NCBI GenBank assembly: GCA_002269645.1 | Contig: NIVC01000325.1 | Coordinates: 1 to 36,901, forward strand | Origin: Macrostomum lignano | Lineage: Eukaryota | Reading direction: 5' to 3' | Length of the DNA: 36,901 nt | Part shown: piece by piece, positions 13,901-36,669 of the stretch | How positions within the stretch are numbered: position 1 is the stretch's first letter | Layout: every line of letters begins with the position of its first letter | Made by a program: the position numbers and the translations under genes | The notes under the pieces: model-generated | What the model saw: the letters and a program-made list of their open reading frames with translations, nothing else | Database searches by the model: none | What the model was told of the DNA's origin: nothing

Positions 13901-15657
13901 CGTATCTGATATTACTACCGGCTATCTCGCTTGCTCACACCAAGCTTATTAAGTTGTTAGCTAATTGGCTGAAAAGCAGGCGGATTTAGAAAGGCATCGC
14001 TCTGCACGAATTGTGCCAAGTGACCATCAGTACTCCACTGCAAGCTCGGAAAAATTTCAATCACAAGCCGGAGAAACAGTTATTACGGAAATGAAAATTT
14101 GACACTATAAACTCATAGTAGAATAAAGTTATTGTTTGGAAAAAGCAATCATTAATAGGTAATTAGCGATCCTGAACAGTTTAGCCAGCCAATGGACAGC
14201 AAAGTATTCTTATTTCCGCTTGGAAAGCAAGCAGATGGCAACACTGAGGCGTATTGAAGAAAGGCAATGCTCTGCATATTAACGAGATAGAATGACATGG
14301 GAAGGAGGAGGGGGCGAGTTGCGAGACGAAACAGGAATCTCATTAGTTCCTTAGCGGGACAACGCTGCATTGAGCTGCCCTACCCGCATGCTATAGCTAG
14401 TGCTCCCCCCCCCCTACTCAAAATATTGCATCCAATTTTGACCGCACCTGTGTAGGCTTGTTGTATGCAGCTACATAGGTAGCGATATTGGACTGCGGGT
14501 CAGAGGATAAGCGTACGAAGCGGGGATGAGCAGAGTGCCTATCGCGAGTGCCCATACGCGATTTTTTTGGGACGTTGCGGTTGCAATTTGCATGCGGCCG
14601 CTGACCAGTATCGGGTAGCGGCCGCCACTGCGGAAGCCTCTTGCTGTTTTATGCAGCAGCCGGCAGTGTTTTAGTGGTGTCTTGCCCTCACCCTCCACCG
14701 ACACCCACAAAACTAAGGCAGTCTGGCATGATGGATGAGGGACAACTGCAGTTTCTACCGTTGCGAAGCGCTGGCCAACGCGCTAATGCAATTTGTAGCA
14801 GAGACTTTCAACCGAGAAAGATCGAGACAGACGAGAGAGTGAGTGGCAGTTGCTCACCCGACAATCAAATTGCAGCCCAAATTCATAGATTTCACCGTTT
14901 TATAAGTATATTTCTTGCGAAAATAGTGGCCGGAGTTTGGAGGCGAACGGACGGGGAGATAAAAATAGAGTAAAAAGAGGCGCAAGCAGAAGCAGAGAAA
15001 ACGAGATCGGCGGTCTTCAGCCAAGCGCAGTAGGGGTCCGCGATGTATGAATTTATTTTAATTTATTTCCCCCACATTTCCTCAATCCTTCCACCATAGC
15101 TCCCCTATTTCTGTCTCATCCCTTACCTCTTCATCCCTAACCTGAGCCCTCGCTTCCACGTCAGTTTCCATACAAGTGCGGCAGCAGCGCAAGCCAATTC
15201 TAGCAAACTGACCCCTCCTATCCACGGCTGTCCCGTCTAGCCACTCCGCCACTGACTCCCCGGCCTCAGTCTCTTCGCCCCGTCACTCGCTCCCAAACTC
15301 CTCTCCCCTGCCCCCAACCAACTCCCTCCAATCCCATTCAAGCTTCCTCCCTCATCACTTGCATCTCTCCCCCTGACTCCATATCCTTCTCTTTTTTTCA
15401 GCTCCTGCCAGCGATAGATTGCGAGCCGCCCCAGAGCCAGGCTCAAAACCGCTGTTTAAAATAGATGGGCGCAGAGACAAAAAGTTTGTCCTGCAGTAAT
15501 CTGTAAGGCAGCGCCGGCTAAATGGAATCTCGAAGAAGTCATTCGACGGTGGTGAAATGCTCGACAATGGCACCCAAATAGGAGCGCATTTTCGTCAAAA
15601 CTTTTCCGTTTCTGTCTTTGTTCCGGTCAGTCAGTTTTCATTTTTTAATACTCAGAG

Positions 15658-16983
15658 ATGTCGGCCCAAGCTGCTGCAGCCGTGTTTCCGGGTCAGTTCC
15701 TGGATTTGCCCAGCCTCTTGAGCTCAGGCTCCATCCTGGCCAGCGGTTCAGTGCTCAACTCCATGAATATCGGCCAGCTACCGCGGCTGGTCGAGAAGAA
15801 GAGCGACACCACCTATGTTCTAGTTGGAGTTGGTGGCGTAGGCGCTGGCACCGGCCATATGACAAGATTCACGGTGTTCTTCATTGTGTTGCAGTTTTTA
15901 TGCGGCGTGCTGTCAATCCTGGTGGGTCTGCTGGGCGTAGTCGTTGCCAGCATCCGCATACGCAAGCAGGTGGTCATCGCTGCGCTGTTGCTCTCCTCCG
16001 GACAGGCAATCCTATCCGCCATCTGCTTGACTTTCGGCGCTCTCGATACTAAAGACGCTTGGCACGACGCCAAACAGTCGATTGACAATTTTGCAAAGAT
16101 GCTGATGAACTGCATCAACACAGTGTGCTCGGTGTGCCTGTGCGTCTCGCTCACTCGACGGCTGTACCGCTACAGGGACTACGCAGTCTGTCGGTTCAAC
16201 CAGTTTCGGCCACCGGTTGTCGTCTGCACCGGGGCAGTCATCGCCACCTCGATTGCCAGTTTGAGCGCATTTGCATCTGGCATGATGCTCTCCGTGACGC
16301 AGAAGTACAACTACGCAGGCGGACTGCACATGGGCCTCCTAGGACTCACGCTAGGTCTAGCAATGGTTCTCAACCTGAAGCTGATGATTCATCAGGCCAG
16401 CACCATCGCATGCCTTTTGCTCATTGCGTTCACTCTGCTCAGCTCCTGCGCAGCCGCCTACACGGAGAGCGTCGAGCTCGATAACGTCGCCGGGACGCAG
16501 AGCACCAGAAAGCTGTACTACGGTTATATCATCAAGTCGGCAGTTGTTTACTTCTCCGCGTTGCTCAATATTGCAACTGTCGGTGCTTTGGCTCCATGCC
16601 AGTTTCTGCGCCTCTGGCACATGGCCGTCATTCAGGGCAACGCCGAGGACGAAGAAGAGGTCACAGCGGCTGCGGCAGCTGCGGCGGCTGACACCAGCAA
16701 TGCCGTCAACATCGGAGACCACGATGACGGAGGAGCGACCTTCAATCAGTTGTCTTCGGCAAACCCCAACTCGCCGCTGCTGCTGTCCGTCAGACAACTC
16801 TGGCGAGATCATCAGCAGCCGCAGCAGCATCCGCCAGTCTGCTGGGCAACCATACGGGGGCGGACAATGTCAGCGCTGCTTCCAACAGCACGACATTGCC
16901 TAGAATGCCGTACCAGCAACAGCAGCTCCATCACATGCAACAGCTTCATTCGCGGTTCGCTACTGGCGCTCAGGCGTGATTGA
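15658..16983 (+). CDS. Intronless multi-pass membrane protein (~7 TM), family unassigned, 441 aa
   Basis: Long ORF with GC3-rich codon usage like the other genes. Seven hydrophobic segments and an acidic/poly-Ala/Gln tail. Acceptor-like tttttaatactcag just before the ATG; AATAAA at 17074. Confidence 0.8.
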   Translation: MSAQAAAAVFPGQFLDLPSLLSSGSILASGSVLNSMNIGQLPRLVEKKSDTTYVLVGVGGVGAGTGHMTRFTVFFIVLQFLCGVLSILVGLLGVVVASIRIRKQVVIAALLLSSGQAILSAICLTFGALDTKDAWHDAKQSIDNFAKMLMNCINTVCSVCLCVSLTRRLYRYRDYAVCRFNQFRPPVVVCTGAVIATSIASLSAFASGMMLSVTQKYNYAGGLHMGLLGLTLGLAMVLNLKLMIHQASTIACLLLIAFTLLSSCAAAYTESVELDNVAGTQSTRKLYYGYIIKSAVVYFSALLNIATVGALAPCQFLRLWHMAVIQGNAEDEEEVTAAAAAAAADTSNAVNIGDHDDGGATFNQLSSANPNSPLLLSVRQLWRDHQQPQQHPPVCWATIRGRTMSALLPTARHCLECRTSNSSSITCNSFIRGSLLALRRD

Positions 16984-18382
16984 TAGTTCACTTGTTTGAA
17001 CTTTCTGGGTCTACAGGTGCTAATTAGGCGGTGATAGTTGAAAACTAAAGTTAAAATAGCTAACGGAAATTAAAATAAAATTAACCAACATCCAAAGTTG
17101 AAAGCTTATGGAAGAAAGACTGAAGACAGGCAAACCAAGAGAAGTCACTGGTAGAAGTTAACCAGGAGTTAATCAACCAATTAATCCTATCAGAATTTTA
17201 GACTAGATTTTATTAGCCATTGGATTAAACTTTGTTCTAAAAATCGTCGCTAATAATGTAACGGCACAACATATGTCTGCACACCGCTCTGTTAAATAGT
17301 TTAGCACTCTGCTGTTTATAGCGGGTCAGGCAGAAAGTATTCAGAATTGTTTAAGAAGAAAGCAATTTTCTGTTGCATTATCATTATCAACCATATGTTA
17401 TTCACATTCAATGTTAATTGCACGTAAGTAAGCGCCTAGATATTTTGATATAGCTAGTTATAATTGTCACGTACATGTAAGAATATGTTTTTTACTAACG
17501 ATTCAACTATTTTTGTATTTCCTTTAACGAGTACTACGAGCAGTCGAGCATGCTATATATATCATCATTATGCTGTACGTCTAAATTCTGGACTACAGCT
17601 TATTATCGAGTGAAAGCATATAGAAATTTTTAATTTTTAGTCACTTCAGCAATTGGTAATTTGTGTACAAGGACGTGAAACTGCTGACTATGCTGCTACT
17701 ATTATATTATAACTCATAGTCTCAGAATGATCGCTACATTAGTAATTGGCCCGTTTCTTATTATACCCCGTCCTTTATACACGAGCTAATTTCCGGCATA
17801 ATCTCTGCTACGTGTAAGCCAGTTAAGTGCGCGACAGCCCTCAGCTTGCACTCTGCGAGTACATTGTCGTTGTAGAGATGAAACCTGCTTTTTATTTATA
17901 TTTGATCTGCTTGGATTTTCTTTTTGTTAAAGCGTTTGTTACAATTAAAATACATGATTAAAGTTCCTCAACTTGAAGCAGATATCAGGAGTATGGCGGG
18001 TGCCCTTTTTGCTTGTACTTGCAGGATATAGCACAGAATATAGCGCTATGAATTATCATTCTCGAACTAGCTACATGTAGCTGTTATAGTTAGTCTAGGC
18101 GTGTTGAAACGGGGTGAAACGCACTGCATCTCGCCCGCTGCAATAATCTATGGCTATGGCCGACTTCCATAAGTAAAAAACCTCGTATGCATATAAGTAT
18201 CTAGTTAATGTTTCTACAACTTGTAGATTTTGAAAGTAAAGCTTAGTACTGCTAAATTATGCTTAGTATCAGTTACTTTTTTTAATTCGCAAAATAAGGA
18301 GTTTTGGCTCCGCCCCCACACCCCCGCAAGGGGGCTCAGCGCCCCTTGACCCCGCTTTCTTTTGACTTTGCCTTAGACATTT

Positions 18383-18643
18383 TCAGCGGGCCGTGAAACC
18401 GACTGAATACATTGGAGTAAATGGGATTTTACCATAGACAGTCTCAACGGGCCATGAAACCGACTGAATACATTGGAGTAAATGGGATTTTACCATAGAC
18501 AGTCTCAACGGGCCGTGAAGCCGACTGAATACATTGGAGTAAATGGGATTTTACCATAGACAGTCTCAACGGGCCGTGAAACCGACTGAATACATAGGAG
18601 TAAATGGGATTTTACCATAGACAGTCTCAACGGGCCGTGAAAC
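18383..18643 (+). repeat. 61-bp tandem repeat, ~4.3 copies
   Basis: Unit TCAACGGGCCGTGAAACCGACTGAATACATTGGAGTAAATGGGATTTTACCATAGACAGTC starts at 18383, 18444, 18505, 18566 and 18627 (partial). Confidence 0.97.
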
Positions 18644-19056
18644 GCGCCTCGGCGTTATAGCTCGTTTCTGCCCTCTGCAGCCCATCAATATATACCAGTA
18701 TACTAGACAAAAAGCCGATTCCCACCCCAGGAATACAAAAGCCATTCTAAATGATTATAATCACTCGCTTTTTTATTCCTTTATAATTTTTCTTCAATTT
18801 CTTCAGATTTCAATTCCGATCGTAACCATATGATCACGCTATAGAACTCAAAGCGTATAATTTTTTTGTTTAAGGATAAAAATATTTCTGAACAGACTCT
18901 GGGAAGCAGATAATATTAACTCGAGATTCGCCATAAATACAAGCATTAAGCAGCTCAGCACTGCAGCGATGGAGTAAAATTTCGCTGAGCTGCATGCAGA
19001 CTCGACGAGGAGCCACATCAATTTATAGTGTGAGATTGCTAATCGGATAAAGATGC

Positions 19057-20987
19057 CTATTGCAGCGAGGCGCAGTAAAGCTGGCCTACATGGAATTGCA
19101 GGGAGCAGTGAGTGAGCAGCGATATACATCGCTTCAGCATATAATTTTCATTGCAACCAACAATTTTGCGTTCACGCAATGAGAGGAAAAAGAGGGAATC
19201 GAGAGCGACATATCTGAAAAATGAAACAAGATCCTTCTGCACACCCGCACTTAGCAGCAGGTCTGACAAGCTGCTAGCACCACTTGCCCGCACACAACGG
19301 TTCTGTTCGCAAAAGATAGCCAAGCGTTTCCTGCTCACAGCTCTCAATAGCAACTCTTGCTCTCTTGCCATCGACTCACATCTTCCTTCCTCCCAGCAGT
19401 CCCCCGGGTCCATTTCCCGAAGGATTTCTACAAGAAGGATCGCGCTGAGGCCGGATTGACCTGCTGCTTGTTCTGGCTTGGCACAATATTAGAGAATAAA
19501 TTTGGGAACACATAACAGGGGGAACTCTGATGGGTCGATAAAAATGCATTTACATCAGTGGGGAGAGAGAGATCTGGGGAAAGACAGAGAAAAATGTAGT
19601 AGAGAAGTAAAGATCGTTTGAGACGCGGTGGGATCAGATGGAGTGAGGATGCGGTGGTTGGCTGGGTCTGACGCGTATAGACTAGATTTAGTGAATGATT
19701 TATACTGTCGTCAAACCGTGACAGCGACAGTCGTGGCACTGATGAGACGACTACCCACCGAACGATAAAAACGCTCAGTATCAAATATTGCTCGCTGAAA
19801 TTAATAGTTACTCCGAATAAGCTGAACACATATTCAAATCTATCATGGGTGTGCGAGGCCACTTCAATATTTCTGAATGTAGGTAAGGGGAACCTTTTAG
19901 CTAATGTAAGAATATCTAGACACAACAGGCCAGGGTTGTAGCCTAGTGGTTAGAGCGTCGCGGTCTCACGACTTGAAGGTCGGGGGTTTGATTCCTGATA
20001 CCATGGATTGGATTTGATTTCCATGAATTGGAAAAATTTGTCTTGAGTAAGTAAGACACCTAACCCTGCATCGCTTCAGTTCATACAGAATTATTTGGGG
20101 CAACTCAATTGAGGCGACTCCACAAGGCTGTAAAGGCCTTGTGTGGGGAGTGGGGAGCCCCCTCAGTCCTTGAACTGAACAGCCAGCAGCCTTCAGATGC
20201 GCCGCGCAATAGCTGCAGCTGCTGTCGGTTGTACATGTGCCCATTTGGACAGGTGTAATAAATTATTACTATTACTAATAGGCCTATATGGAAAATAAGC
20301 CAACTGCCTAGTTTTCTTCAGCAGTGCCTCAAGAAATACAATAAGCACAAAATTACAATTTGCTGATCGCACATAACAATTTCAAACAACCATCAGAGTG
20401 AAATACAAGAGTCCATTTACTAAAAAAATTGTTTAACCTTTCTTTAAGTATGTTTACAAATCTTGATTTGCAACTAAATACGGCTGAAACTATCCCATTA
20501 TCAAGTCTGAATTAACTAACATAATTTCCCCTAACACTCCAAAATTAATTACAATGTTTCTATGACGCAATTAAGAGCCTGCTTTTCAGTGTTGGTCATC
20601 ATAATTGTTTGCTAGTCATGACAAGTTTTATAATTACTTTAAAAATAAGTAGTCACTTGCCGATTAATATGACCTGGAGATGAGACCAATGGAATTGTTT
20701 TTGAAAAGCCGATTAGTTAGCTTGATTTTCTTTAAACTGTTTACTTTAAGTAGTATTGAATTCAATACATGCAGATTGATCAAATTTAGATAAATAAAAG
20801 CTAATATAGAGTAGATAATGCGCAAATATATTAGTAAATTTGTACTTAAGCTGTTAAAATTAATTTGGCACAAATAAAGATAAATGAGGCAAGTATTACG
20901 TGTTTCTGTTCTTATATTTTTAAGTGCAATATTTAACTTGCTTTTCAAAGAAACTGAAGCATTAATCTTGTAATACCCTTGTGTCAT
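19057..20987 (-). CDS. Candidate multi-exon gene of unknown function, head-to-head with fem-1 (exons ~20987-20674, 20506-20357, 19872-19673, then ~19470-19057; 3' end uncertain)
   Basis: Phase-consistent chain: AG|gtcata, aattcag|A...TT|gtaatt, cattcag|A...C|gtcaga, all frames open. The SINE falls inside predicted intron 2. All three CpGs in exon 1 are in Arg codons. No family recognised. Confidence 0.45.
19929..20280 (+). mobile_element. tRNA-derived SINE
   Basis: A-box TAGCCTAGTGGTTAGAGCG (19939-19957) and B-box GGTTTGATTCC (19985-19995). Acceptor and T stems do not pair, so it is not a tRNA. Core GTCTTGAGTAAGTAAGACACCTAACCCT resembles the V/Meta-SINE central motif. AT-rich (ATT/ACT)n tail. 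Confidence 0.75.
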
Positions 20988-23900
20988 CACCGTTAAAACA
21001 TTTCTTGTAAATAGATCCGAATTTTAAGTTGGTGTCGTTTCTATTTATGTTGCCGCAAATTTTCCAATTTTCTATTTTAAAGTCTTATAGTTTCCTTTAG
21101 AGTCATTGTCATAATGAAAGAGATTATTTTCCAATGAGTTGTTGATTGTACTGTGTAGGGTAGTGCATGTAAACAGGAAGTTGTGAGCTTGGCTTGTGTT
21201 GTTGCATTTGTGTCTAATCCTGATCCCTTATTGTTAAATTTCAGAAAAAATTATTCAACGTAGCAAAGTGATCCGTTAAATTTAGAGCAAGTATAAGTTT
21301 TTTGCAATGCAAAATAACTTTATTGCACTTTGTCGCAATGGCACTTCTTTCCAAAAATTTTATGATCAACTTCAAAAACGTGATCGACTGGAAAGACGAA
21401 GAATTGTTAATATGATTATTGAAGGAGCCACCTGTTTGATCAACTCATCTCGTTATGGTTTGTATAAATTTGTTTACAATATGCAATATATTTTATATTA
21501 ATTTATAATTATATGACTAGGGGCCTATGTTTACCACCAAATTCAAGACACTTATAGCCTATTTTTATTATGAAAAGGACATATTTAGGCCTACTTTGTC
21601 CTTTTATTTATTTATTTCCTTATATAACTTTTATTTTTAACTAGTTAATTTTTAATAACTTTTATAACCTGGACTAGGCCTTACCCCTAGGCCTAGGCTA
21701 TTATTATTAGTAGTATTGTGGTTAGGCCTATTCGTATTATATCATAACCTAGGTCAGTTTGAGTGCCTAGTCCCAAGTACAATATAGGTTAGATGTTAAT
21801 ATAACATGTGTAATGATGCTCTGTCTAGTACTTACATGGATATAAGCAAGCGTGATGATGCTCTGCAATAATAGGTTACTCTGTTTAGTATTGTGACATT
21901 CAGAGTTTGTGCTGCAGCTTGGGGTATGATGACAATCTTGAGTGTTTATATAGTGGGTATACAATATAAGTAGAGATATAGTTTGGTACAAGCTATATGC
22001 TCTCTCAGCATTATGACCCTTTGGCAAGAACTCCCTGTAGCCTAACAAGCTTCTACTGTAGTAGTGCTTCAATACTCTACGAATTTTGAGCAATAAAGGT
22101 ATGTTTTCTTAGAAACCAAACTCGTGCAAAATACTAGATAAATATTTTGTTTTAATGCATCAAATGTATTTGTTTTACCATACCAAATATTTTGTTTTAC
22201 TAGGCCTATGCAAAATAAATTGGAGAATTATTTTTTTGTTTTAATCATATGGAGGGGAAACCACTATATATAGGAGTGATTTTGTAGCAAATAAACCAAC
22301 TGTCTGATACTTGTAAGCAAATATTATGAGCAAAATAGCAGTTCAATCTATACATTTCAAAGTCTTTCAAGCTAAATAACAACTTATTCATTTGCAAAAC
22401 CTGAAAAACAATTCCAAGAAATTTGCTAAGAGAGGGAATTGGGACTAATTCTTGGAGATATACTAAGAGAGGCGCCGTGACCCTCTAGTCTCAGTGAACG
22501 CCCGATTAGGACTATCTACTAATTCATGTACCAGTACTAGACCACTTAGGCCATAAGCTACCAGAACATTACCAGAATGCTACTAGAAACACTACCAGAA
22601 ATGCTACTAAGAATGCTACCCAGAAATATTCAAATGAAATTCTAAGAAACAGTTAGAAACATTAAGGCAAGATTTAGTGTCAGCAATAGAAATTTAAGAG
22701 AGGAAATTAAAAACCTGTCACAGCTTGTGGCAATTAGTGGGATATTCAGAGGATAGAAGTAAGCCCTACGACACCCTTAGGAAAATATTTTAGAACATAT
22801 GAGTAGTTTTTTTTTAGATTTGCCAAGATTTAAAGTGCATTTAAGTTTTGTAACTTTTGCATAAAATAAAGAGGCCTAGTATGGCCTATTACATAATGTA
22901 AGTTACATTAAATGTAACAACAAAAAAAGGTTTTATTGTGTCCCAGGGCTCTTATTTATTCCTTTGCTTGCCTTACTAGCTGCCACCAAGCTGTTACAGG
23001 GGTTATTCCTTTTTGTTAATATTGCTGGTTATTATCTGCCTTTTACTAGTAGCATATGTACTTCTATTGGTAGCATATGTACTCTTATTGGTAGCGTCTG
23101 TACTTCTATTGGTAGTGTATGTACTTTTATTGTACTTTCTGGCCTGAGCGGTCTTTTTAGGCACTGTTTATCCTATTCCTATACTCCTCTAACGATATTA
23201 TTCTCAGTCCTGGGTGTTCCCGGGATCAGAGGGTCACAGCGCACTTCGCTGGGTATTCTGCCCTGAGGCGGGTTTCTCAGACTCTAAGCTTGGAGTTCTC
23301 TACCCTGTGGTAGGATCTCTGCCTCCTAAAGGCGGGTTACTAGACTCCTAAGTCTAGGATTTCTCGTTCTCTGAGAATGGACTGGACTCCCAATCTTGGG
23401 GCAACTCATAAACTACTATCCACTACTCGAAATAAGTAACACGAGCAAATACGAGCTCAAGGCTGATAGAATTTCTTCTCTACTGAGAATTGCTTATTGT
23501 TCAACGAGGAACAGACAAGAGCAAGTTGGTTTGCTAGGCTCTCAAATGGCAAAACAAAATAATAGCTTTTTTTGAATTTATACCTTTTCTAAGAAATGTA
23601 AACTACTAAAAGAAGAAGGCCTATTACAATTGTCATAATAGAAAAGTAAAGTTGCATAATTTTGAAATTCTATTATACATTATAGTCATTTCCAAATTTT
23701 TGGCATTTACCTAAAACTTTGCCTAAAAAATTCTAGCATACACTTAACACCTTCCTAACAAAGGTATGCATTGGCTTTGTATGCCAAAAGTTTGCCATGC
23801 ATATACCTGGCATAGTATATAGTTTATATAATCACATAGAAGAGTTTATTAAGTGGAAAAATATTAATAAGTTTATTTTTCTAGGTTGAATAATATTATG

Positions 23901-24560
23901 ATTAAACTTTTATCTAAGATCCTAGGATTGCAGGATTATAGAATTAGGATTAGGAATCAATTATTAAGTATATATCAAGGTCCATAGTCAGGAAGAAGGC
24001 ATGTATGCTAGAAATTTCTAGGGTAGAATCAATAAATTTGGCATATATGTTGGCATACAAAAAGTGATTCTGGTCTTTTGGTATACACACTTAATATTTT
24101 AATGTTTGATATGTATCTAAAGTTTAAAAAAATTACATTATCAATAGCACTTACAATAGTTGTCTATGAATTAAAATTTTAACAAAGATATACAAATTAT
24201 TTTTTGTTTGTTATATATATTCAAAATGGAAATACAAATATAATAGTTATTTTTAGTCTTTTATTTTATCTAATTGATATTAAATATCAAAATTGCTAGT
24301 CTAATAGTAACATTTCAAAATTGATAATTTGAAGCTTTGCATATTTGGTATACATTGGGATATATAAAGAATGTTCCAAACTATGGATCAAGGTTAGAAA
24401 AGGATAAGATTTTTGCAATTGGATAAAATTAAATTAACTGTTATCAACAACTATTATTCAGTAGTATTTATTGTATGAATTGCAAAACCAAATTTAGAAG
24501 TAGAATTGTAAGTTAAAAAATAATAAAGTGTCAAGAATAAACTTCCTATGTGCAAAAGCT
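20280..24560. other. CpG-depleted, TpA/CTAG-enriched domain spanning the 5' ends of fem-1 and the divergent candidate gene
   Basis: Manual count ~40 CpG in ~4.26 kb, and none in ~23505-24565, versus ~22 in 600 bp of AT-rich DNA at 9001-9600. Recurrent TAGGCC, GGCCTA and CCTAGG. Confidence 0.8.
21307..21457 (+). CDS. fem-1: FEM-1, coding exon 1 (AT-rich)
   Basis: MQNNFIALCRNG...RRIVNMIIEGATCLINSSRYG aligns with the FEM1 N-terminus (AVFNAARDG...TNGATPLLMAARYG) at the same length. In-frame upstream stop at 21283. Phase-1 donor TAT G|gtttgt joins exon 2 to give RYG-HLD. Confidence 0.82.
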
Positions 24561-24651
24561 TTTTATCGCTCCAAATATGGCTATGGGAAGTTATCGATCA
24601 GAGGTTTTTAAGCACAAATCAATGATTGTTACCTTTTTAGTAGTGACTTGA

Positions 24652-25071
<420 letters not shown>

Positions 25072-25118
25072 TGATTGAAGAGCAATTCTTGCTTGCCTGA
25101 TTGCTTGGCTTCGTCTGA

Positions 25119-26070
25119 CCTTAATTGACCCCTGCAGTTTTGTGGGCTCACCTCATTTGACCCCAGTTATTCCTATGCCTCTCACCTTAATTGACCCCTG
25201 TTATTCCTATGCCTCTCACCTTAATTGACCCCGGTTATTCCCATGCCTCTCACCTTAATTGACCCCTGTTATTCCCATGCCTCTCACCTTAATTGACCCC
25301 GATTATCCCCATGCCTCTCACCTTAATTGACCCCGATTATCCCCATGCCTCTCACCTTAATTGACCCCGGTTATCCCCATGCCTCTCACCTTAATTGACC
25401 CCGATTATCCCCATGCCTCTCACCTTAATTGACCCCGGTTATTCCCATGCCTCTCACCTTAATTGACCCCGGTTGTTTCCATGCCTCTCACCTTAATTGA
25501 CCCCGATTATCCCCATGCCTCTCACCTTAATTGACCCCAGTTATTCCCATGCCTCTCACCTTAATTGACCCCAGTTATTCCCATGCCTCTCACCTTAATT
25601 GACCCCAGTTATTCCCATGCCTCTCACCTTAATTGACCCCGATTATCCCCATGCCTCTCACCTTAATTGACCCCAGTTATTCCCATGCCTCTCACCTTAA
25701 TTGACCCCAGTTATTCCCATGCCTCTCACCTTAATTGACCCCAGTTATTCCCATGCCTCTCACCTTAATTGACCCCGATTATCCCCATGCCTCTCACCTT
25801 AATTGACCCCAGTTATTCCCATGCCTCTCACCTTAATTGACCCCAGTTATTCCCATGCCTCTCACCTTAATTGACCCCGATTATCCCCATGCCTCTCACC
25901 TTAATTGACCCCAGTTGTTCCCATGCCTCTCACCTTAATTGACCCCGATTATCCCCATGCCTCTCACCTTAATTGACCCCAGTTGTTCCCATGCCTCTCA
26001 CCTTAATTGACCCCGATTATCCCCATGCCTCTCACCTTAGTTGACCCCAGTTGTTCCCATGCCTCTCACC
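25119..26070 (+). repeat. 34-bp minisatellite, ~28 units, fem-1 intron 2
   Basis: Unit CCTTAATTGACCCCAGTTATTCCCATGCCTCTCA. Degenerate at the left edge; ends ~20 nt before the acceptor. Confidence 0.98.
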
Positions 26071-26092
26071 GAGCGCCAACCGCCCACGCCAG

Positions 26093-26387
26093 GTACCTGC
26101 TAGACGTCGGCGCCGACCACCAGCGCCAGAGCACGAAGGGCAACACGGCGCTGCACGACGCCGCCGAGAGCGGCAACCTGCGCATCCTCAAGCTGCTCCT
26201 TGACCGCGGCGCCCAGCTCCGGCCGGACATTCACGGCGTCTCCCCGCTGCTCGGCGCCGCCAATTCCGGCCACGCCAACATCGTGGACTACCTGGCCGGC
26301 CACCCGGAGCTCGTGCCCGACCCTGCGGAGCGAGTGCACGCTATGGAGCTGCTCGGCTGCACCCTGGTTGACAAGCGGCGCGACTGG
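26093..26387 (+). CDS. fem-1: FEM-1, exon 3
   Basis: gccag|G TAC ... TGG|gtgagt. KGNTALHDAAESG and AMELLGCTLVDKRRD correspond to FEM1C KGNTALHDCAESG and ALELLGATFVDKKRD. Confidence 0.96.
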
Positions 26388-26612
26388 GTGAGTCGGGGAA
26401 TTCCCGTTTTTGAGGAGCTTTGAGAAAGTTCAATTGGAATTTTTGCGCTTGAAAATATTTGGGAAATAATTGAGTTGATACCCTTTGTTCAAAAGGGAAT
26501 TCTCGGTGCCATGGTAGCTTTTATTCTATATGCGGAGATATAGGTTTCGAGACCTGGGGGAATTTGAGCTGGAATTCTCTTACTAAAATTCCCCTCCCCT
26601 CTCAAATTGAAG

Positions 26613-26870
26613 GTGAGCGGCCTCCGCCGCTGGCGCAAAGCGCTGCGCCTTCGCGAGGGCCTCCGGCTGCCAAAGGCGGCGGCGCCGCGGCACGAGGCGG
26701 CCTTCGCCGGCGCCAAGGAGTTTCAATCTGCAGCTGAGCTGGACGAGGTTGCCGCCGACCCGGAAGCTGTCCGATTGCAGGCCCTGATGGTGCGGGAGCG
26801 GATTCTGGGCTCCGAGCACCCCGACACAGCCTACTATATGCGCTACAGGGGCGCCGTGTACGCCGACCAG
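26613..26870 (+). CDS. fem-1: FEM-1, exon 4
   Basis: tgaag|GTG ... CAG|gtttgg. LQALMVRERILGSEHPDTAYYMRYRGAVYAD is a FEM1 hallmark. Confidence 0.96.
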
Positions 26871-26939
26871 GTTTGGCCACAGAAATTCTGCTTTGTTTTG
26901 CTGCCTCAATCTGATAACTGCTGCGATTGGGTCACTCTG

Positions 26940-27815
26940 GGTCAGTTTGGGTCATAAAGGTCAACTTTAAGTAATGCTAAACTCAAAAGGTCAGTTGGGG
27001 TCATGTTACGAGTTAAACTCAAATGAGTCATTGCTAAAGGTCAGTTAGGGTCATGCTAGACTCAGATGAGTCATTGTCAAAGGTCAGTTGGGGTCATACT
27101 AGACTCAGATGAGTCATTATTAAAGGTCAGTTGGGGTCATGCTAGACTCAGATGAGTCATTGTCAAAGGTCAGTTGGGGTCATGCTCGACTCAGATGAGT
27201 CATTGCTAAAGGTCAGTTGGTGTCATGCCGAGTCATGCTAGACTCAGATGAGTCATTGCTAAAGGTCAGCTTGGGTCATGCTAGACTCAGATGAGTCATT
27301 GCTAAAGGTCAGTTGGTGTCATGCTCGACTCAGATGAGTCATTGCTAAAGGTCAGTTGGGGTCATGCTCGACTCAGATGAATCATTGCTAAAGGTCAGTT
27401 GGTGTCATGCTCGACTCAGATGAGTCATTGCTAAAGGTCAGTTGGGGTCATGCTCGACTCAGATGAGTCATTGCTAAAGGTCAGTTGGTGTCATGCCGAG
27501 TCATGCTAGACTCAGATGAGTCATTGCTAAAGGTCAGCTTGGGTCATGCTAGACTCAGATGAGTCATTGTCAAAGGTCAGTTGGGGTCATGCTCGACTCA
27601 GATGAGTCATTGTCAAAGGTCAGTTGGGGTCAGGCTAGACTCAGATGAGTCATTGTCAAAGGTCAGTTGGGGTCAGGCTAGACTCAGATGAGTCATCGTG
27701 AAAGGTCAGTTGGGGTCATGTTATACTCAGATGAGTCATTGCTAAAGGTCAGTTGGGGTCATGTTATACTCAGATGAGTCATTGCTAAAGGTCAGTTGGG
27801 GTCAGGCTAGACTCA
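26940..27815 (+). repeat. 43-bp minisatellite, ~20 units, fem-1 intron 4
   Basis: Unit GACTCAGATGAGTCATTGCTAAAGGTCAGTTGGGGTCATGCTA. First ~2 units are degenerate. Confidence 0.97.
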
Positions 27816-27920
27816 CAAGTCAGTCATAAATTTACAATGTCGGCCTAAGTAAGCCCTGCAGGCTCTCAAGAACCGAACAAACCAGTGAATTGCAATCTCT
27901 GATTTTGCCACATCAACCAG

Positions 27921-28100
27921 GGCCAATTCGAGAGCTGCCTTCGCCTGTGGCTGTACGCCCTGGAGCTGCAGCTGCGGCACGCCAGCCCCTTCTTTCCCGC
28001 TAGCCTGGCCTCCTTCAACAACTTCATCGAACTGTTCGCCTTCATGCTGAGCTCCAATGCCAGGCCGCTGGCAGCTCAGTGGACCGAAGTGCTCGGGCAG
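27921..28100 (+). CDS. fem-1: FEM-1, exon 5; not in the ORF track
   Basis: accag|GGC ... CAG|gtgagc, 60 codons. GQFESCLRLWLYALELQ...SFNNFIELFAFML matches FEM1 GNFKRCINLWKYALDMQ...SFAELFSFML. Confidence 0.93.
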
Positions 28101-28222
28101 GTGAGCAGTTCAGTTAAAGTTATGCTAATTGCCAATATTTGAAGTAAAAAACGCTCTCTTGCTACTGCCGAGAGCCAGTAGTACAATAAGGAAACAAATC
28201 AAACTGTCTCCAATCCCCCAAG

Positions 28223-28663
28223 GTCCTCTGCCGTTGCGTGTTGGAACTCGCCAAGTCTTTCAAGGCTCTCGGCCTGCCGTTCCGGACCGCCGTCGCTGCA
28301 GACGGCACTGCCGCGGCCGCTTCTGCTGGAGACTCCGCTGCTGCTGCTGCAGTTGCCAGCGAAGCACCTTCGACTAATTCAGCAGCCACCGCCACGGCCG
28401 CAGCCGCCGCGGCCACCGTTGCGTCGCCGGAGGAGCGGCCGCTGCAGTACGCCGACCGCCTGCTTGAGTGCCTGGCCACCCTCACCGCCCTGCTCGTGCG
28501 GGCCGCCGCTGCCGCCTCTTCCGCCTCCTCGGCTGCCTCTGCTGACGTCGCTGATGATCCACCGGACTTCGCCCTGCCACTCGCAGTCAGGCAGGCCCTG
28601 TTCGACGTGCGCTGCGTTGCCAGCCCGTTGTCTGGCAATCGCCTCATTCACTTCGCTTGTCAG
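28223..28663 (+). CDS. fem-1: FEM-1, exon 6 (with Ala-rich insertion)
   Basis: cccaag|GTC ... CAG|gtaatt, 147 codons. VLCRCVLEL, LECLATLTALL and GNRLIHFAC lie at FEM1-equivalent positions. Confidence 0.88.
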
Positions 28664-28676
28664 GTAATTCTGCAGT

Positions 28677-28843
28677 TTTTGTATGACCGCGTGGAACTGG
28701 ATGGTGCTTTTGTATGACCATGTGGAACTGGATGGTGCTTTTGTATGACCATGTGGAACTGGATGGTGCTTTTGTATGACCATTTGGAACTGGATGGTGC
28801 TTTTGTATTGTATGACCGTGTGGAACTGGATGGTGCTTTTGTA
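28677..28843 (+). repeat. 31-bp minisatellite, ~5 units, fem-1 intron 6
   Basis: Unit TTTTGTATGACCATGTGGAACTGGATGGTGC. Confidence 0.95.
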
Positions 28844-28846
28844 AAA

Positions 28847-29938
28847 CCCGGAACTATATGAGTACACCCGGAACTGTATGAGCACACCCGGAACTGTATG
28901 AGCACACCCGGAACTGTATGAGTACACCCGGAACTGTATGAGCACACCCGGAACTGAATGAGCACACCCGGAACTGAATGAGCACACCCGGAACTGAATG
29001 AGCACACCCGGAACTGTATGAGCACACCCGGAACTGTATGAGCACACCCGGAACTGAATGAGCACACCCGGAACTGAATGAGCACACCCGGAACTGTATG
29101 AGCACACCTGGAACTGTATGAGTACACCCGGAACTGAATGAGCACACCCGGAACTGAATGAGCACACCCGGAACTGAATGAGCACACCCGGAACTGAATG
29201 AGCACACCCGGAACTGTATGAGCACACCTGGAACTGTTTGAGCACACCCGGAACTGTTTGAGCAGATCCCGAACTGTATGAGCACACTCGGAACTGTATG
29301 AGCACACTCGGAACTGTATGAGCACACTCGGAACTGTATGAGCACACCCGGAACTGAATGAGCACACCCGGAACTGTATGAGCACACCCGGAACTGTATG
29401 AGCACACCCGGAACTGAATGAGCACACCCGGAACTGAATGAGCACACCCGGAACTGTATGAGCACACCTGGAACTGTATGAGTACACCCGGAACTGAATG
29501 AGCACACCCGGAACTGAATGAGCACACCCGGAACTGAATGAGCACACCCGGAACTGAATGAGCACACCCGGAACTGTATGAGCACACCTGGAACTGTTTG
29601 AGCACACCCGGAACTGTTTGAGCAGATCCCGAACTGTATGAGCACACTCGGAACTGTATGAGCACACTCGGAACTGTATGAGCACACTCGGAACTGTATG
29701 AGCACACTCGGAACTGTATGAGCACACGCGGAACTGAATGAGCACACCTTGGAACTGTATGAGCACACTCGGAACTGTATGAGCACTCGCGGAACTGAAT
29801 GAGCACACGCGGAACTGTATGAGCACACCCGGAACTGTATGAGCACACTCGGAACTGTATGAGCACACCCGGAAGTGTATGAGCACACCCGGAACTGTAT
29901 GAGCACACCCGGAACTGTATGAGCACACCCGGAACTGC
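28847..29938 (+). repeat. 20-bp minisatellite, ~54 units, fem-1 intron 6
   Basis: Unit CCCGGAACTGTATGAGCACA. Ends ~15 nt before the exon 7 acceptor. Confidence 0.98.
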
Positions 29939-29953
29939 ATGCCCTCCCCGCAG

Positions 29954-30613
29954 TCGAGCCGCCGGTCGCGCATCACGGAGCGCTACCCGGCCACCCAGCT
30001 GCCGTGTCCGGCCACTGTCCGACTGTTGCTCCGGCTTGGTGCCGGCGCCGACTCCGTCAATCGCGACGGCGACACGCCGCTTCACTTGGCGACCCGCGCC
30101 CGCAGCGTGGATTCGGTTGGCGCCCTCCTGAGCGCCGGCGCGCACTCTGACTTGCCCAACTCTGCCGGCAAGTCGCCGCTGGGCGAGCTGCTCCTGGTGT
30201 CGGCCGCCGCCGGCAGCAACGAGGTCGCTTTGGACACCGGCGGCGCCGACGACTCGGCGGCCACCAGCTCGATCGTCTGCCTGCTGCGCTCGGCCCGGTT
30301 CACCCGCCTGTCCTGCCTGTGCGCCACCGCATTCGCCAAGTCCGGCCAGCCGCTGCCGCCCGGCTGCTCCGGCTGGGTGCGCGACACCCTGCTGGCCCAC
30401 TGCCCGCCTCAGCGGCAGGCCGGCGCCGCTTCCACTCTAACGGCGACTTCGTCTCTATCGAACTCGAGCTTATCGAGCGGAGCGTCGCCGCCTTCGCCGC
30501 CGAGCGCCGGCGCGGGTCCATCGATGTCCTACCAGCAGCAGCAGCAGCAGCACCAGCAGTCGACGGCCTCTTCCCCTGATCAGCGCGACCGCCAGCAGCA
30601 GCAGTCTGTCTAA
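29954..30613 (+). CDS. fem-1: FEM-1, terminal exon 7 (C-terminal ankyrin repeats, BC/VHL-box-like motif, Ser/Pro/Gln tail)
   Basis: ccgcag|TCG. RYPATQLPCPATVRLLLRLGA...NRDGDTPLHLA and TRLSCLCATAF (cf. TLQCLAARVI). Stop TAA at 30611-30613; AATAAA at 30661. Confidence 0.93.
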   Translation, partial: SSRRSRITERYPATQLPCPATVRLLLRLGAGADSVNRDGDTPLHLATRARSVDSVGALLSAGAHSDLPNSAGKSPLGELLLVSAAAGSNEVALDTGGADDSAATSSIVCLLRSARFTRLSCLCATAFAKSGQPLPPGCSGWVRDTLLAHCPPQRQAGAASTLTATSSLSNSSLSSGASPPSPPSAGAGPSMSYQQQQQQHQQSTASSPDQRDRQQQQSV

Positions 30614-30739
30614 AAGCGATTTTTTTAGAGATTTTGCTCCATATTTCTCTTCCCTCTTTTAATAAATTGACTGCCACGTGATTTGGTTGCGTCATAAACA
30701 GTCATCATCAGTTTAGAGCATGTTCATATGTCATACACT

Positions 30740-30935
30740 CGGTCAATTGGGGTCATGCTAAATTAAATGAGTCATGGCGTGTTATTTAGGGTCATGAAAA
30801 TTCATAAATCTTAGGGTCGAACTAACTGACTGCTAGATTCGAATAGGTCATTTAAGGTCGTGCTAGACTCCTCAGTCGTTCCTCAGTCAAGGTCACACTG
30901 GACTGAAACGAGGCATACAATGTCATTTAAGGTCA
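30740..30935 (+). repeat. Degenerate copies of the 43-bp intron-4 repeat, downstream of fem-1
   Basis: GGTCAATTGGGGTCATGCTAAATTAAATGAGTCAT and AAGGTCGTGCTAGACTC align with the 43-bp unit. Confidence 0.7.
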
Positions 30936-31406
30936 CGCTGCAGTTACCAGTCTGTGTTTGCAGACAAAATGGGTGATTTTATATGAGAATATTACAATAA
31001 GATTCCAAGACTAATTTGCTTGGTTTGCCTTTCCAATCCATAATTGATAACTTTGCTAATACAAACCATATTTTCCTTGCTTAATTTATGCCTGAAGACC
31101 CAATATTTCTAGGTTCAGGTAGATTCACTGGATTTGTTTAACTTTTTAATAAGATTTGTAATTTTGTGTCTACTTTTTTGTCTTGTCAATGCTTCGTGTG
31201 AATATCAGTTCGGCTTGCTCAGTGCTATCTCTGTGTTTCAATCACTTCGAGTTTTAATTAAATTGCTCCAAATTTGAAGGATTTTTTAGTTCTCTTAAAT
31301 ATGCCAGTTCTTTATATGGATATCATCACTAACTGCTTTAATTGTATTTTAGTTCGAGCTTTAGGAGGTTGAACCCTGTTCATGCCCTCCCTGTAGTGAA
31401 CTGTTT

Positions 31407-31979
31407 ACCCTCCTCAGAAAGCTGCTACCCTCCTCAGAGAGCTGCTACCCTCCTCAGAAAGCTGCTACTCTTCTCAGAAAGCTGCTACCCTCCTCAGAAA
31501 GCTGCTACCCTCCTCAGAGAGCTGCTACCCTCCTCAGAAAGCTGCTACCATCCTCAGAGAGCTGCTACCCTCCTCAGAAAGCTGCTACCCTCCTCAGAGA
31601 GCTGCTACCCTCCTCAGAAAGCTGCTACCCTCCTCAGAGAGCTGCTACCCTTCTCAGAAAGCTGCTACTCTTCTCAGAAAGCTGCTACCCTCCTCAGAGA
31701 GCTGCTACCCTCCTCAGAAAGCTGCTACCCTCCTCAGAGAGCTGCTACCCTCCTCAGAAAGCTGCTACCCTCCTCAGAGAGCTGCTACCCTTCTCAGAAA
31801 GCTGCTACTCTTCTCAGAAAGCTGCTACCCTCCTCAGAAAGCTGCTACCCTCCTCAGAGAGCTGCTACCCTCCTCAGAAAGCTGCTACTCTTCTCAGAAA
31901 GCTGTTTGCCCTCCTCAGAAAGCTGTTTGCCCTCCTCAGAAAGCTGTTTGCCCTCCTCAGAGAGCTGCTACCCTCAGAG
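31407..31979 (+). repeat. 20-bp minisatellite, ~28 units
   Basis: Unit CCCTCCTCAGA(A/G)AGCTGCTA. Confidence 0.98.
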
Positions 31980-32664
31980 TTTCCAAAGTTAGTTATAGTT
32001 TTTTCCTAAAACTCACTCTGCCCTGTCCCTATATTCACTTGATTTGATGCCAATGTTAAAAATCTATTTTGTTTCCTAATGTACATGATTCGTTTTTGCT
32101 GTTAAATGCTGGTTCGTGATGCTCCATCGTATCCCAGCTTCCCGCAATTGTACAATTTTTTACCCCAAAAATTGGTCATTTTTTCCTTCCGATAAAAATC
32201 GCTTTGTTTTACTCACTTTCCCCGTTTCAGTCAGTAGTATTAGTGGCGCGCGTGAATTATTTCTCTCCAAATTTGGTTATATTAAACCCCACCCTCTTCC
32301 GCGCAAAAATTACAAGATTTCATTCATTCAAGTTGTTCTCAAAAGTTCTGCTGCTACTATAAGATTTTTCCTATTTTTTTCTTTTACACATTCTATTACT
32401 GAGCTAGTAGTAACTGTAGATTATTGCTTGGCACCTACCTAATTACTGTGAATAGTTGGTTGCGAACTAAAGATTATCTGCACCAGCTGTTGATTGCTTA
32501 TCTATATATATTAATATAATAATCAGTGATGGATCTGGCTTAACTACCCCTGTCATTCATGCATGAGCTCATGCTAATGCCCAAACTGTCTGCTTCAGTA
32601 CAATCTCCATGCAGCTTCTTTGTTATTTTTTATATTCAAATGATAATTCAAGCCCTTATTACCT

Positions 32665-36275: not shown

Positions 36276-36454
36276 ATTGAGCTGTTTACATAGAAATGAA
36301 AAGTCGTATCGTTTTAAAATATCTATTTTGTGCAGAAGAATTTTGTAAAATATTCATTTGTATTCTCATATGTGATTTATTTTAGGATAAATATTTTATC
36401 GAATAACATCAGAGCAGTTGTTGTGTTGCTATAAGCATCTCAGTAGTCTTTGCT

Positions 36455-36618: not shown

Positions 36619-36669
36619 CTGAAAATGGCAGGCGAAAACTCGATCATTTTGTTTCGAAATTTGATCCTT

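What the first reader, a model, noticed from the sequence alone, without database searches (positions are those of the whole stretch)
21307..21457. fem-1 is compositionally split: exon 1 keeps CpG only where arginine requires it
Exon 1 is ~34% GC with ~24% GC3 (manual count), whereas exons 2-7 are strongly GC- and CpG-rich. All 5 CpGs in exon 1 are at codon positions 1-2 of Arg codons, with none in NCG codons or across codon junctions. Exon 1 of the divergent candidate gene shows the same (3 of 3). This is what purifying selection opposing a local CpG-destroying process would leave, and it shows the process acts on live coding sequence, not only on dead repeats.
Basis: partly seen in the sequence, partly recalled or inferred. 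Interest (0 to 1): 0.7.

Follow-up and report, generated by a model that had tools for sequence, protein, structure and literature searches.

The report
Flatworm fem-1 exon in CpG-poor island
The first coding exon of a flatworm (Macrostomum lignano) fem-1 gene sits in a 4.7-kb AT-rich block where CpG sites mutate unusually fast, so its silent sites have drifted to AT and only arginine-coding CpGs survive; this looks like the footprint of patchy DNA methylation, not a new kind of system.

Summary
The window is a whole contig of Macrostomum lignano assembly Mlig_3_7. The gene is the FEM1A/C-type homeolog BOX15_Mlig034082g2, and my 7-exon model equals its annotated 775-aa protein.

Exon 1 has GC 34.4%, GC3 24%, and 5 CpGs, all at C1G2 of CGN arginine codons. 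Exons 2-7 have GC3 70-92%.

The GC3 split is far beyond chance (p=2e-17). The "5 of 5 in Arg" pattern alone is not significant (P~0.09 given exon 1's own GC3). The "divergent gene" ORF is broken in the two other lineages compared, so it is not a gene.

Comparison of the three homeologous subgenome copies supports a local CpG-specific process. Transitions hit 17/82 CpG sites in the island's noncoding DNA. They hit 0/363 in neighbouring noncoding DNA and 6/512 in exons 2-7.

Exon 1 is under purifying selection (0 nonsynonymous changes, about 5 expected).

CpG decay alone cannot give GC3 24%, because complete synonymous decay of exons 2-7 would leave 53%. Both compartments are at compositional steady state, and the split predates the subgenome divergence.

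Methylation is inferred, not shown. M. lignano keeps DNMT1/3 according to the literature. Overall this is a known kind of footprint in a lineage whose methylation pattern is said to be unknown.

The parts
20001..24727 (.). AT-rich, CpG-depleted island: upstream region, exon 1 and intron 1 of fem-1
   Evidence: GC is 0.22-0.50 per 250 bp (mostly about 0.3). CpG observed/expected is 50/131. CpG o/e is 0.51 upstream and 0.29 in intron 1, against 0.88-1.05 in other noncoding DNA. CpG transitions among homeologs are 17/82 sites.
21307..21457 (+). fem-1 coding exon 1 (50 codons + 1 nt)
   Evidence: GC 34.4%, GC3 24%, 5 CpG all in CGN. Identical to annotated protein P0150. The peptide is identical in 4 copies, with 3 synonymous changes only.
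21334..21336 (+). Arg codon CGC (CpG 1 of 5)
21379..21381 (+). Arg codon CGT (CpG 2)
21385..21387 (+). Arg codon CGA (CpG 3)
21397..21399 (+). Arg codon CGA (CpG 4)
21451..21453 (+). Arg codon CGT (CpG 5)
21458..24727 (+). intron 1 (3270 bp, GT-AG)
   Evidence: GC 0.323, CpG o/e 0.29, TG+CA o/e 1.01. ts:tv is 64:8 in 21.46-24.0 kb among homeologs.
22935..23629 (.). segment of intron 1 present only in the window lineage
   Evidence: Absent from L004/L008 (22935-23629) and L005/L007 (22925-23801). Locally higher GC and more CpG.
24658..24727 (+). in-frame ATG and 23 codons at the 3' end of intron 1, used as the start in the annotation of homeolog C (748-aa model that skips exon 1)
   Evidence: P0149 is 748 aa, which equals 23 + 725. 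The ORF extension is identical in all copies.
24728..25070 (+). fem-1 exon 2
   Evidence: GC3 0.79, 26 CpG
26093..26387 (+). fem-1 exon 3
   Evidence: GC3 0.92, 39 CpG
26613..26870 (+). fem-1 exon 4
   Evidence: GC3 0.83
27921..28100 (+). fem-1 exon 5
   Evidence: GC3 0.85
28223..28663 (+). fem-1 exon 6
   Evidence: GC3 0.70
29954..30613 (+). fem-1 exon 7 including the stop codon
   Evidence: GC3 0.86, 94 CpG
   Evidence: 3 CpG, all CGN. Frameshift in B, stop in C, substitutions mostly at codon positions 1-2.

Best explanation
The gene is one of three homeologous copies (plus one redundant near-identical contig) of a FEM1A/C-type ubiquitin-ligase substrate receptor in the neopolyploid flatworm Macrostomum lignano. 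Its first coding exon lies inside a 4.7-kb AT-rich block made of the upstream region and intron 1.

Shown:
- In this block, and not in neighbouring noncoding DNA or in exons 2-7, CpG dinucleotides are depleted and are lost and gained by transitions at roughly 10 times the rate of other sites.
- Exon 1 is protected at the amino-acid level.
- Its silent sites sit at the neutral base composition of the block.

Inferred:
- The block is a germline-methylated domain in a genome with sparse 5mC made by DNMT1/DNMT3.
- 5mC deamination removes every CpG that a synonymous transition can remove.
- C1G2 of CGN arginine codons survive because CGN>TGN and CGN>CAN change the amino acid, and CGN>AGR needs a rare transversion.
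- The force that keeps GC3 at 70-92% in the other exons does not operate, or is outweighed, in exon 1. That force could be codon selection or GC-biased conversion.

The state is an old equilibrium shared by all subgenomes, not a decay in progress.
For: - Organism and gene.
- Composition by exon.
- Island CpG o/e in all copies.
- CpG-site transitions are 17/82 in the island, 0/363 in control noncoding DNA (p=7e-14), 6/512 in exons 2-7 (p=3e-11), and 85/3507 at other island sites (OR 10.5).
- Purifying selection on exon 1.
- 4-fold sites of exon 1 diverge 3/18 against 9/460 in exons 2-7 (p=0.008).
- Arg family usage is 5 CGN: 2 AGA. I expect about 25% CGN from island composition, a rough estimate I made by hand from island base and dinucleotide frequencies. 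The binomial tail at p=0.25 is P=0.013.
- CpG-decay simulation leaves CpG only in CGN.
- Equilibrium: I derive a polarised island GC* of 0.27-0.30 from the counts. Observed GC is 0.31 and exon-1 GC3 is 0.24.
- CpG columns of three satellites or minisatellites are the most transition-variable columns.
- DNMT1 and DNMT3 are retained and 5mC is low in M. lignano (PMC11292947, PMC9246332).
- The three homeologous subgenomes differ by about 2% (PMC10733133).
Against: - No methylation data were seen for this locus, so 5mC is inferred.
- TpG+CpA is not in excess in intron 1 (o/e 1.01).
- The CpG effect relative to other G/C sites in the island is only about 3-fold.
- CpG decay alone cannot give GC3 0.24.
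- Exon-1-specific tests are weak (P~0.09, 0.098; combined 0.05).
- Genealogies differ along the locus, which points to gene conversion among copies. Polarisation of some changes may therefore be wrong.
- A methylated promoter-proximal region is unexpected for an expressed gene.
Confidence: 0.6

Rival explanations
1. Weak codon selection on a minor isoform. GC3-richness in M. lignano reflects selection on codon usage. Exon 1 escapes because most fem-1 mRNA starts near exon 2, from an alternative 5' end inside intron 1 or by trans-splicing at the exon-2 acceptor. Exon 1 is then rarely translated and its silent sites drift to the neutral AT-rich composition. CpG depletion of the block would be a separate matter.
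For: - Homeolog C is annotated with a 748-aa product that starts at the ATG at 24658 and skips exon 1.
- That 23-codon extension is identical in all copies.
- Short introns 3 and 5 have GC 0.40 beside exons with GC3 of about 0.85. The GC3 force is therefore exon-specific rather than regional.
- Trans-splicing is widespread in this species (PMC5730564).
Against: - Two homeologs, g1 and g2, are annotated with exon 1.
- Exon 1 shows clear amino-acid constraint (P about 0.01).
- This rival does not explain the CpG-site hypermutability of the block.
- No expression data were examined.
Confidence: 0.25
2. Purely regional base composition. The block is simply neutral AT-rich DNA, shaped by AT-biased mutation without GC-biased gene conversion. 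Exon 1 follows its flanks and there is no CpG-specific process.
For: - Exon-1 GC3 (0.24) is close to flank GC (0.30-0.32) and to the block's equilibrium GC (0.27-0.30, derived).
- Control noncoding DNA also has an AT-biased equilibrium. I derive GC* of about 0.36 from the counts.
- GC-rich parts of the locus are the least diverged among homeologs, as expected if conversion both homogenises and raises GC.
Against: - CpG transitions are 17/82 against 0/363.
- Other equally AT-rich noncoding stretches have CpG o/e of about 0.9-1.05.
- Exons 2-7 have GC3 far above their own introns.
Confidence: 0.1
3. Processive deaminase or RIP-like hypermutation of a repeat-derived intron, spilling into exon 1.
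For: - ts:tv is 64:8 in the intron-1 core, against 30:49 in other noncoding DNA.
- ts:tv is 44:3 in intron 1 on the branch between the window lineage and the other two.
Against: - The same 8:1 ratio is found at 4-fold sites of exons 2-7.
- Transitions go both ways and on both strands, with no strand-coordinated runs.
- There is no CpA or TpC context preference.
- Island divergence is about the genome-wide homeolog average (PMC10733133).
- No further copies of the island were found in about 100 kb of held sequence.
Confidence: 0.04
4. Annotation artefact: exon 1 is not part of fem-1.
For: One homeolog is annotated without it.
Against: - The exon-1 peptide aligns with the FEM1 N-terminus, including GATxL...RxGHL across the junction.
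- It matches the RNA-seq-based annotation exactly.
- It is intact, with only synonymous changes, in 4 copies.
Confidence: 0.02

Closest known systems
Mosaic (patchy) cytosine methylation footprints in invertebrate genomes: CpG o/e bimodality caused by 5mC deamination
   Same: Local CpG depletion lies next to CpG-normal DNA. The CpG transition rate is elevated only in the depleted domain. The organism keeps DNMT1 and DNMT3 (PMC11292947, PMC9246332).
   Different: The usual invertebrate pattern depletes CpG in gene bodies of housekeeping genes. Here exons 2-7 are CpG-rich (o/e about 1). The depleted parts are an AT-rich promoter/intron-1 block and satellites, which is closer to repeat- or heterochromatin-targeted methylation. 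TpG/CpA excess is absent in intron 1. Methylation itself was not observed.
CGN arginine codons as retained, hypermutable CpGs in methylated vertebrate coding sequence (general knowledge)
   Same: CpGs persist where both transitions are nonsynonymous and are lost at synonymous positions.
   Different: Here the effect is confined to one exon of a gene whose other exons are full of synonymous CpGs.
Isochore-like correlation of GC3 with flanking GC, and GC-biased gene conversion
   Same: Exon-1 GC3 equals the composition of its flanks. GC-rich segments are the least diverged among homeologs.
   Different: Exons 2-7 exceed their adjacent introns by 30-45 GC points, so the GC3 force is exon-specific rather than regional.
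Repeat-induced point mutation (RIP) AT-isochores of fungi
   Same: AT-rich, CpG-poor blocks lie beside GC-rich genes, with transition-dominated divergence.
   Different: There is no CpA>TpA bias, no strand-coordinated tracts and no duplicated target. Transitions run in both directions. The organism is an animal.

Membership tests
FEM1 (fem-1 homolog, CRL2 substrate receptor) | N-terminal ankyrin-repeat domain with FEM1-type sequence | tested here: met
   Residues 25-262 align with human FEM1C 26-261 at E=3e-94. FEM1B matches at E=2e-63. Fem-1 homologs from many animals are 55-63% identical.
FEM1 (fem-1 homolog, CRL2 substrate receptor) | Central TPR-like helical region and C-terminal ankyrin repeats | tested here: met
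   The C-terminal 512 aa hit Daphnia fem-1 B and the CG6966-like protein over the conserved 'DPE..RLQAL..RERILG..HPDT.YY.RYRGAVYAD' stretch. The full model is 775 aa.
FEM1 (fem-1 homolog, CRL2 substrate receptor) | C-terminal VHL/Cul2 box and degron-binding pocket residues | not tested
   No residue-level or structural check was done.
Germline-methylated (5mC) CpG-decay domain | CpG observed/expected well below that of neighbouring DNA of similar GC | tested here: met
   0.29-0.51 against 0.88-1.05, in all three subgenome copies.
Germline-methylated (5mC) CpG-decay domain | CpG sites evolve by transitions faster than other sites, and only inside the domain | tested here: met
   17/82 against 85/3507 within the island. 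0/363 and 6/512 outside it.
Germline-methylated (5mC) CpG-decay domain | Compensating excess of TpG/CpA | tested here: not met
   TG+CA o/e is 1.01 in intron 1 and 1.21 upstream.
Germline-methylated (5mC) CpG-decay domain | Maintenance and de novo DNA methyltransferases in the genome | not tested
   Literature only: DNMT1 and DNMT3 are retained and 5mC is low in M. lignano (PMC11292947, PMC9246332). An older survey found only DNMT2 and MBD2/3 (PMC3710501).
Germline-methylated (5mC) CpG-decay domain | 5mC actually present on this DNA in germline cells | not testable with these tools
   Needs bisulfite, EM-seq or nanopore data.
RIP-like or processive deaminase hypermutation | Unidirectional C>T/G>A in a preferred dinucleotide context, in strand-coordinated tracts, on duplicated DNA | tested here: not met
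   Both directions and both strands occur. Runs tests give P=0.47-0.89. There is no context preference beyond CpG. No extra copies were found.
Regional (isochore / gBGC) control of GC3 | GC3 tracks GC of adjacent noncoding DNA for all exons | tested here: not met
   True for exon 1 (0.24 vs 0.30-0.32). False for exons 2-7 (0.70-0.92 against introns at 0.40-0.52).

The most novel reading that the evidence does not exclude
M. lignano has a focal methylation system aimed at AT-rich or repeat domains instead of gene bodies. Such domains are also shielded from the exon-level GC3-raising force, for example GC-biased inter-homeolog conversion. A single gene can then straddle two mutational regimes. 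Within-gene GC3 splits would then be a sequence-only map of the germline methylome in a free-living flatworm, whose methylation pattern was said to be unknown in 2022 (PMC9246332).
Probability: 0.25. Interest if true: 0.6.

Novelty: new member of a known kind. Interest (0 to 1): 0.38.

Why it matters
If the inference holds, it gives a locus-level evolutionary footprint of patchy germline cytosine methylation in a free-living flatworm. Most studied flatworms have lost DNMT1 and DNMT3, and a 2022 review calls the genomic pattern of 5mC in free-living flatworms unknown.

The within-gene contrast is also a natural experiment on what makes M. lignano codons GC-rich. One mRNA carries GC3 of 24% in one exon and 82% in the rest. 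Either codon selection differs between isoforms, or a DNA-level process is excluded from the island.

The three homeologous subgenomes provide a built-in way to measure local mutation spectra genome-wide.

In practical terms, the fem-1 gene itself is ordinary.

Tried and rejected
- Exact-protein look-ups of the AA_kinase and membrane-protein ORFs found nothing.
- The first homolog search with exons 1-3 did not return the M. lignano protein. I wrongly took this to mean there were no close relatives. A search with the C-terminal part then found the M. lignano cluster.
- Pfam on ten ORFs gave only AA_kinase and a sub-threshold tetraspanin hit.
- Rfam on 19.0-25.2 kb found nothing.
- The repeat finder on the island gave only a 21-bp minisatellite and one weak inverted repeat, with no transposon ends.
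- I first read the island as hypermutated by transitions, at 6 times the neighbouring noncoding rate. I withdrew this for two reasons. Its divergence matches the published genome-wide homeolog divergence, and its 8:1 ts:tv equals that of 4-fold sites in exons 2-7.
- Strand-run tests for deaminase-like tracts were negative.
- Wasik et al. 2015, the primary source for M. lignano 5mC, is not held in the library.
Full report
**Identity of the sequence**

The window is eukaryotic, with mosaic GC of 26-64%. An AA_kinase/isopentenyl-phosphate-kinase-like ORF at 9978-10958 (-) is 99% identical to BOX15_Mlig017369g1 of Macrostomum lignano. The C-terminal part of the fem-1 product hits a 4-member M. lignano cluster. 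One member, PAA85474.1 (BOX15_Mlig034082g2), lies on a contig of exactly 36,901 bp, which is the window length. The window is therefore a whole contig of assembly GCA_002269645.1 (Mlig_3_7).

**Gene model**

I built a 7-exon GT-AG model by hand: 21307-21457, 24728-25070, 26093-26387, 26613-26870, 27921-28100, 28223-28663 and 29954-30613. It encodes 775 aa. The product is identical to the annotated protein P0150. That annotation is RNA-seq and transcriptome based (PMC5730564), so the 21457^24728 junction has indirect transcript support.

The protein is a FEM1A/C-type homolog. Human FEM1C matches at E=3e-94 and FEM1B at 2e-63. The exon-1 peptide aligns with FEM1 N-termini across the junction.

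Homeolog C is annotated with a 748-aa product that starts at an in-frame ATG (24658) inside intron 1 and skips exon 1.

**Check of the observation**

- Exon 1 has GC 34.4% and GC3 12/50 = 24%.
- It has 5 CpGs, all at codon positions 1-2 of CGC, CGT, CGA, CGA and CGT. There are no NCG codons and no C|G junctions.
- Exons 2-7 have GC 60-71%, GC3 0.70-0.92 and 254 CpGs, distributed 46/69/139 over positions 1-2, 2-3 and 3|1.
- The GC3 contrast is 12/50 against 596/725, p=1.6e-17.
- The two other genes of the window have GC3 0.76 in their first 50 codons. Exon 1 is the only one of 29 fifty-codon blocks below 0.62. AT-rich first exons are therefore not seen in the other two genes of this window.

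The codon-position claim is weaker. With the amino-acid sequence fixed and synonymous codons drawn at exon 1's own third-position composition, 2.1 non-Arg CpGs are expected, and P(0) is 0.08-0.10. Permuting synonymous codons gives P=0.10.

**The second example is not a gene**

The only ORF that fits '3 of 3' is 20987-20667 (-): 107 aa, GC 0.27, GC3 0.31, rich in N/I/L/K. It carries a frameshift in homeolog B and a stop at codon 7 in homeolog C. 8 of its 10 substitutions fall at codon positions 1-2.

**Surroundings**

Exon 1 lies in a block from about 20.0 to 24.7 kb with GC of about 0.3. It has 50 CpGs where 131 are expected. CpG o/e is 0.29 in intron 1 and 0.51-0.54 upstream. Other noncoding DNA of the window has 0.84-1.05, including stretches that are equally AT-rich, such as 17.0-18.4 kb with GC 0.37 and o/e 0.92.

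The 250-bp window holding exon 1 is the only one in the block with CpG above expectation: 7 against 5.6. TpG+CpA is not in excess in intron 1 (1.01). Rfam, Pfam and repeat searches found no element that explains the block.

**Homeologs as a built-in comparison**

Mlig_3_7 contains three homeologous subgenomes that differ by about 2%. Four-copy blocks are usually redundant (PMC10733133). I fetched the other copies:

- g1 on NIVC01001487.1 (L003, L004, L008; lineage B).
- Mlig029402g1 on NIVC01003567.1 (L005, L007; lineage C).
- g3 on NIVC01003506.1 (L006), which is 99.7-99.97% identical to the window and forms lineage A together with it.

Island distances are A-B 3.45%, A-C 2.8% and B-C 2.1%.

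Exon 1 encodes the same peptide in all four copies. There are three synonymous differences and all five CGN codons are kept. At the island's rate, 4.5-5.3 nonsynonymous changes are expected and none is seen (P=0.005-0.012). Exon 1's 4-fold sites diverge 3/18 against 9/460 in exons 2-7 (p=0.008). Exon 1 is thus constrained at the protein level and fast at silent sites. All copies share the island's GC (0.30-0.34) and CpG o/e (0.17-0.53). The split therefore predates the subgenome divergence.

**Local CpG process**

I aligned the unique parts of 14.1-31.4 kb in the three lineages. I then counted sites that are CpG in any lineage and differ by a transition.

| Region | CpG sites changed by a transition |
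|---|---|
| Island noncoding | 17/82 |
| Noncoding 14.1-20.0 kb | 0/363 (p=7e-14 against the island) |
| Exons 2-7 | 6/512 (p=3e-11 against the island) |
| Membrane-protein CDS | 0/195 |
| Exon 1 | 0/10 |

Within the island, CpG sites change 10.5 times as often as other sites. They change 3.1 times as often as other sites that hold G or C.

CpG columns are also the most transition-variable columns in the 35-bp satellite, the 34-bp minisatellite of intron 2 and the 31-bp satellite. Their rate is 18-22%, against 1-4% for other G/C columns. This is not so in the 20-bp array of intron 6. These counts are not independent events.

This supports a local, CpG-specific process. M. lignano is reported to keep DNMT1 and DNMT3 and to have low 5mC (PMC11292947, PMC9246332, PMC10658182). 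Methylation of this block is the most likely cause, but it is inferred.

For exon 1, 0 of 10 CpG sites changed where 2.1 are expected (P=0.098). Combined with the codon-position test, this gives P=0.05.

- Converting every CpG of exons 2-7 that a synonymous transition can remove leaves CpG only in 46 CGN codons. That is the exon-1 pattern. But GC3 would be 0.535, not 0.24.
- GC1 (0.42) and GC2 (0.36) of exon 1 are also low.
- From the counts I derive an equilibrium GC of 0.27-0.30 for the island, using polarised and majority-rule substitutions. Observed island GC is 0.31 and exon-1 GC3 is 0.24.
- CpG losses and gains are equal, 7 and 7.
- In exons 2-7, synonymous W>S and S>W changes are 6 and 6 at GC3 0.82.

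Both compartments are therefore at steady state. Exon 1's silent sites behave like neutral DNA of the block, and a strong GC3-favouring force acts only on exons 2-7. Introns 3 and 5 have GC 0.40 between exons with GC3 of about 0.85. That force is exon-specific, which argues against a simple regional explanation.

Arg family usage in exon 1 is 5 CGN: 2 AGA. I expect about 25% CGN from island composition, a rough hand estimate from base and dinucleotide frequencies. The binomial tail at p=0.25 is P=0.013. This fits CGN codons being frozen: both transitions are nonsynonymous and CGN>AGR needs a transversion.

**What I withdrew**

The intron-1 core shows ts:tv of 64:8, against 30:49 in other noncoding DNA. 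Its transition rate is 4.0% against 0.5%. I first read this as transition hypermutation, and then withdrew that reading for these reasons:

- The island's divergence is about the published genome-wide homeolog value.
- 4-fold sites of exons 2-7 also show 8:1.
- Transitions go both ways on both strands, without strand-coordinated runs.
- Branch loads change along the locus, which points to gene conversion among copies.

The odd feature is rather the low, transversion-rich divergence of the other noncoding DNA. This includes 14-17 kb, with 3 differences in about 2,900 sites. It remains unexplained.

**Verdict**

- A local CpG-destroying process and purifying selection on exon 1 are both backed by homeolog comparison.
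- The exon-1 CpG pattern alone is underpowered.
- CpG decay cannot by itself explain the AT-rich silent sites.
- The state is an old equilibrium.

The main rival for the GC3 split is weak codon selection on a rarely used first exon, which RNA-seq would settle. This is a known kind of footprint in a lineage where it has not been described. The gene itself is ordinary.

Noticed in passing
window 14000-17000 against L007 and L008: The three subgenome copies differ at only 3 of about 2,900 aligned sites here. The 441-aa membrane-protein gene at 15658-16983 has 0 differences. The genome-wide figure is about 2% and intron 1 of fem-1 reaches 3-4.5%. This suggests recent inter-homeolog gene conversion or strong constraint.
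   Followed up: partly
window 17000-20000, 25071-30613 (unique intron parts), 30614-31405: Differences among homeologs in these noncoding stretches have ts:tv of 1:1 or lower (30:49). Intron 1 and 4-fold coding sites show 8:1. Many transversions are A<->T and some are clustered. The cause is unknown; complex events or assembly errors are possible.
   Followed up: partly
window 22935-23629 (to 23801 against copy C): A 694-877 bp segment of intron 1 is present only in the window lineage. It is GC- and CpG-richer than its surroundings. It is either a young insertion or independent deletions in the other two copies. No terminal repeats were seen.
   Followed up: partly
window 25147-26070, 27017-27815, 28677-29941: Introns 2, 4 and 6 of fem-1 are almost wholly minisatellites with units of 34, 43, and 31 and 20 bp. 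Copy number differs among homeologs: from the start codon to the stop the gene spans 9.3 kb here, 6.8 kb in g1 and about 8.3 kb in copy C.
   Followed up: partly
window 2541-5488 and 32668-36278: Two long satellites with 35-bp and 31-bp units have extreme GC skew (+0.5 and +0.84). The 31-bp array contains no GpC at all. Their single CpG is the most variable column, with CG>TG/CA in about 20% of units.
   Followed up: partly
window 9978-10958 (-): An intron-less AA_kinase gene resembles isopentenyl phosphate kinase. Apart from the M. lignano copy, the best database relatives are only 27-34% identical and come mostly from metagenomes. This is an unusual gene for an animal. Its origin, ancient retention or horizontal transfer, was not examined.
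   Followed up: no
window 15658-16983 (+): A 441-aa multi-pass membrane protein ORF has GC3 of about 0.7 and no Pfam match. It is not annotated in the homeologous contig stretch L003.
   Followed up: no
L007 18480-21918 (gene 20341-21909, -): Homeolog C carries a 3.4-kb insertion not seen in the window. It encodes a 457-aa THAP / P-element-transposase-like protein and lies between the 31-bp satellite and the sequence matching window 36281-36901.
   Followed up: no
window 24658-24727: An in-frame ATG and 23 codons run directly into exon 2 and are identical at the protein level in all four copies. They serve as the start of the annotated 748-aa product of copy C. This suggests an alternative 5' end that bypasses exon 1.
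   Followed up: partly
L006 against window 18298-33134: Contig NIVC01003506.1 is 99.7% identical to the window over 14.8 kb. It is probably a redundant representation of the same subgenome copy, as described for 4-copy blocks in PMC10733133. Its fem-1 model, g3, is truncated to 614 aa.
   Followed up: partly
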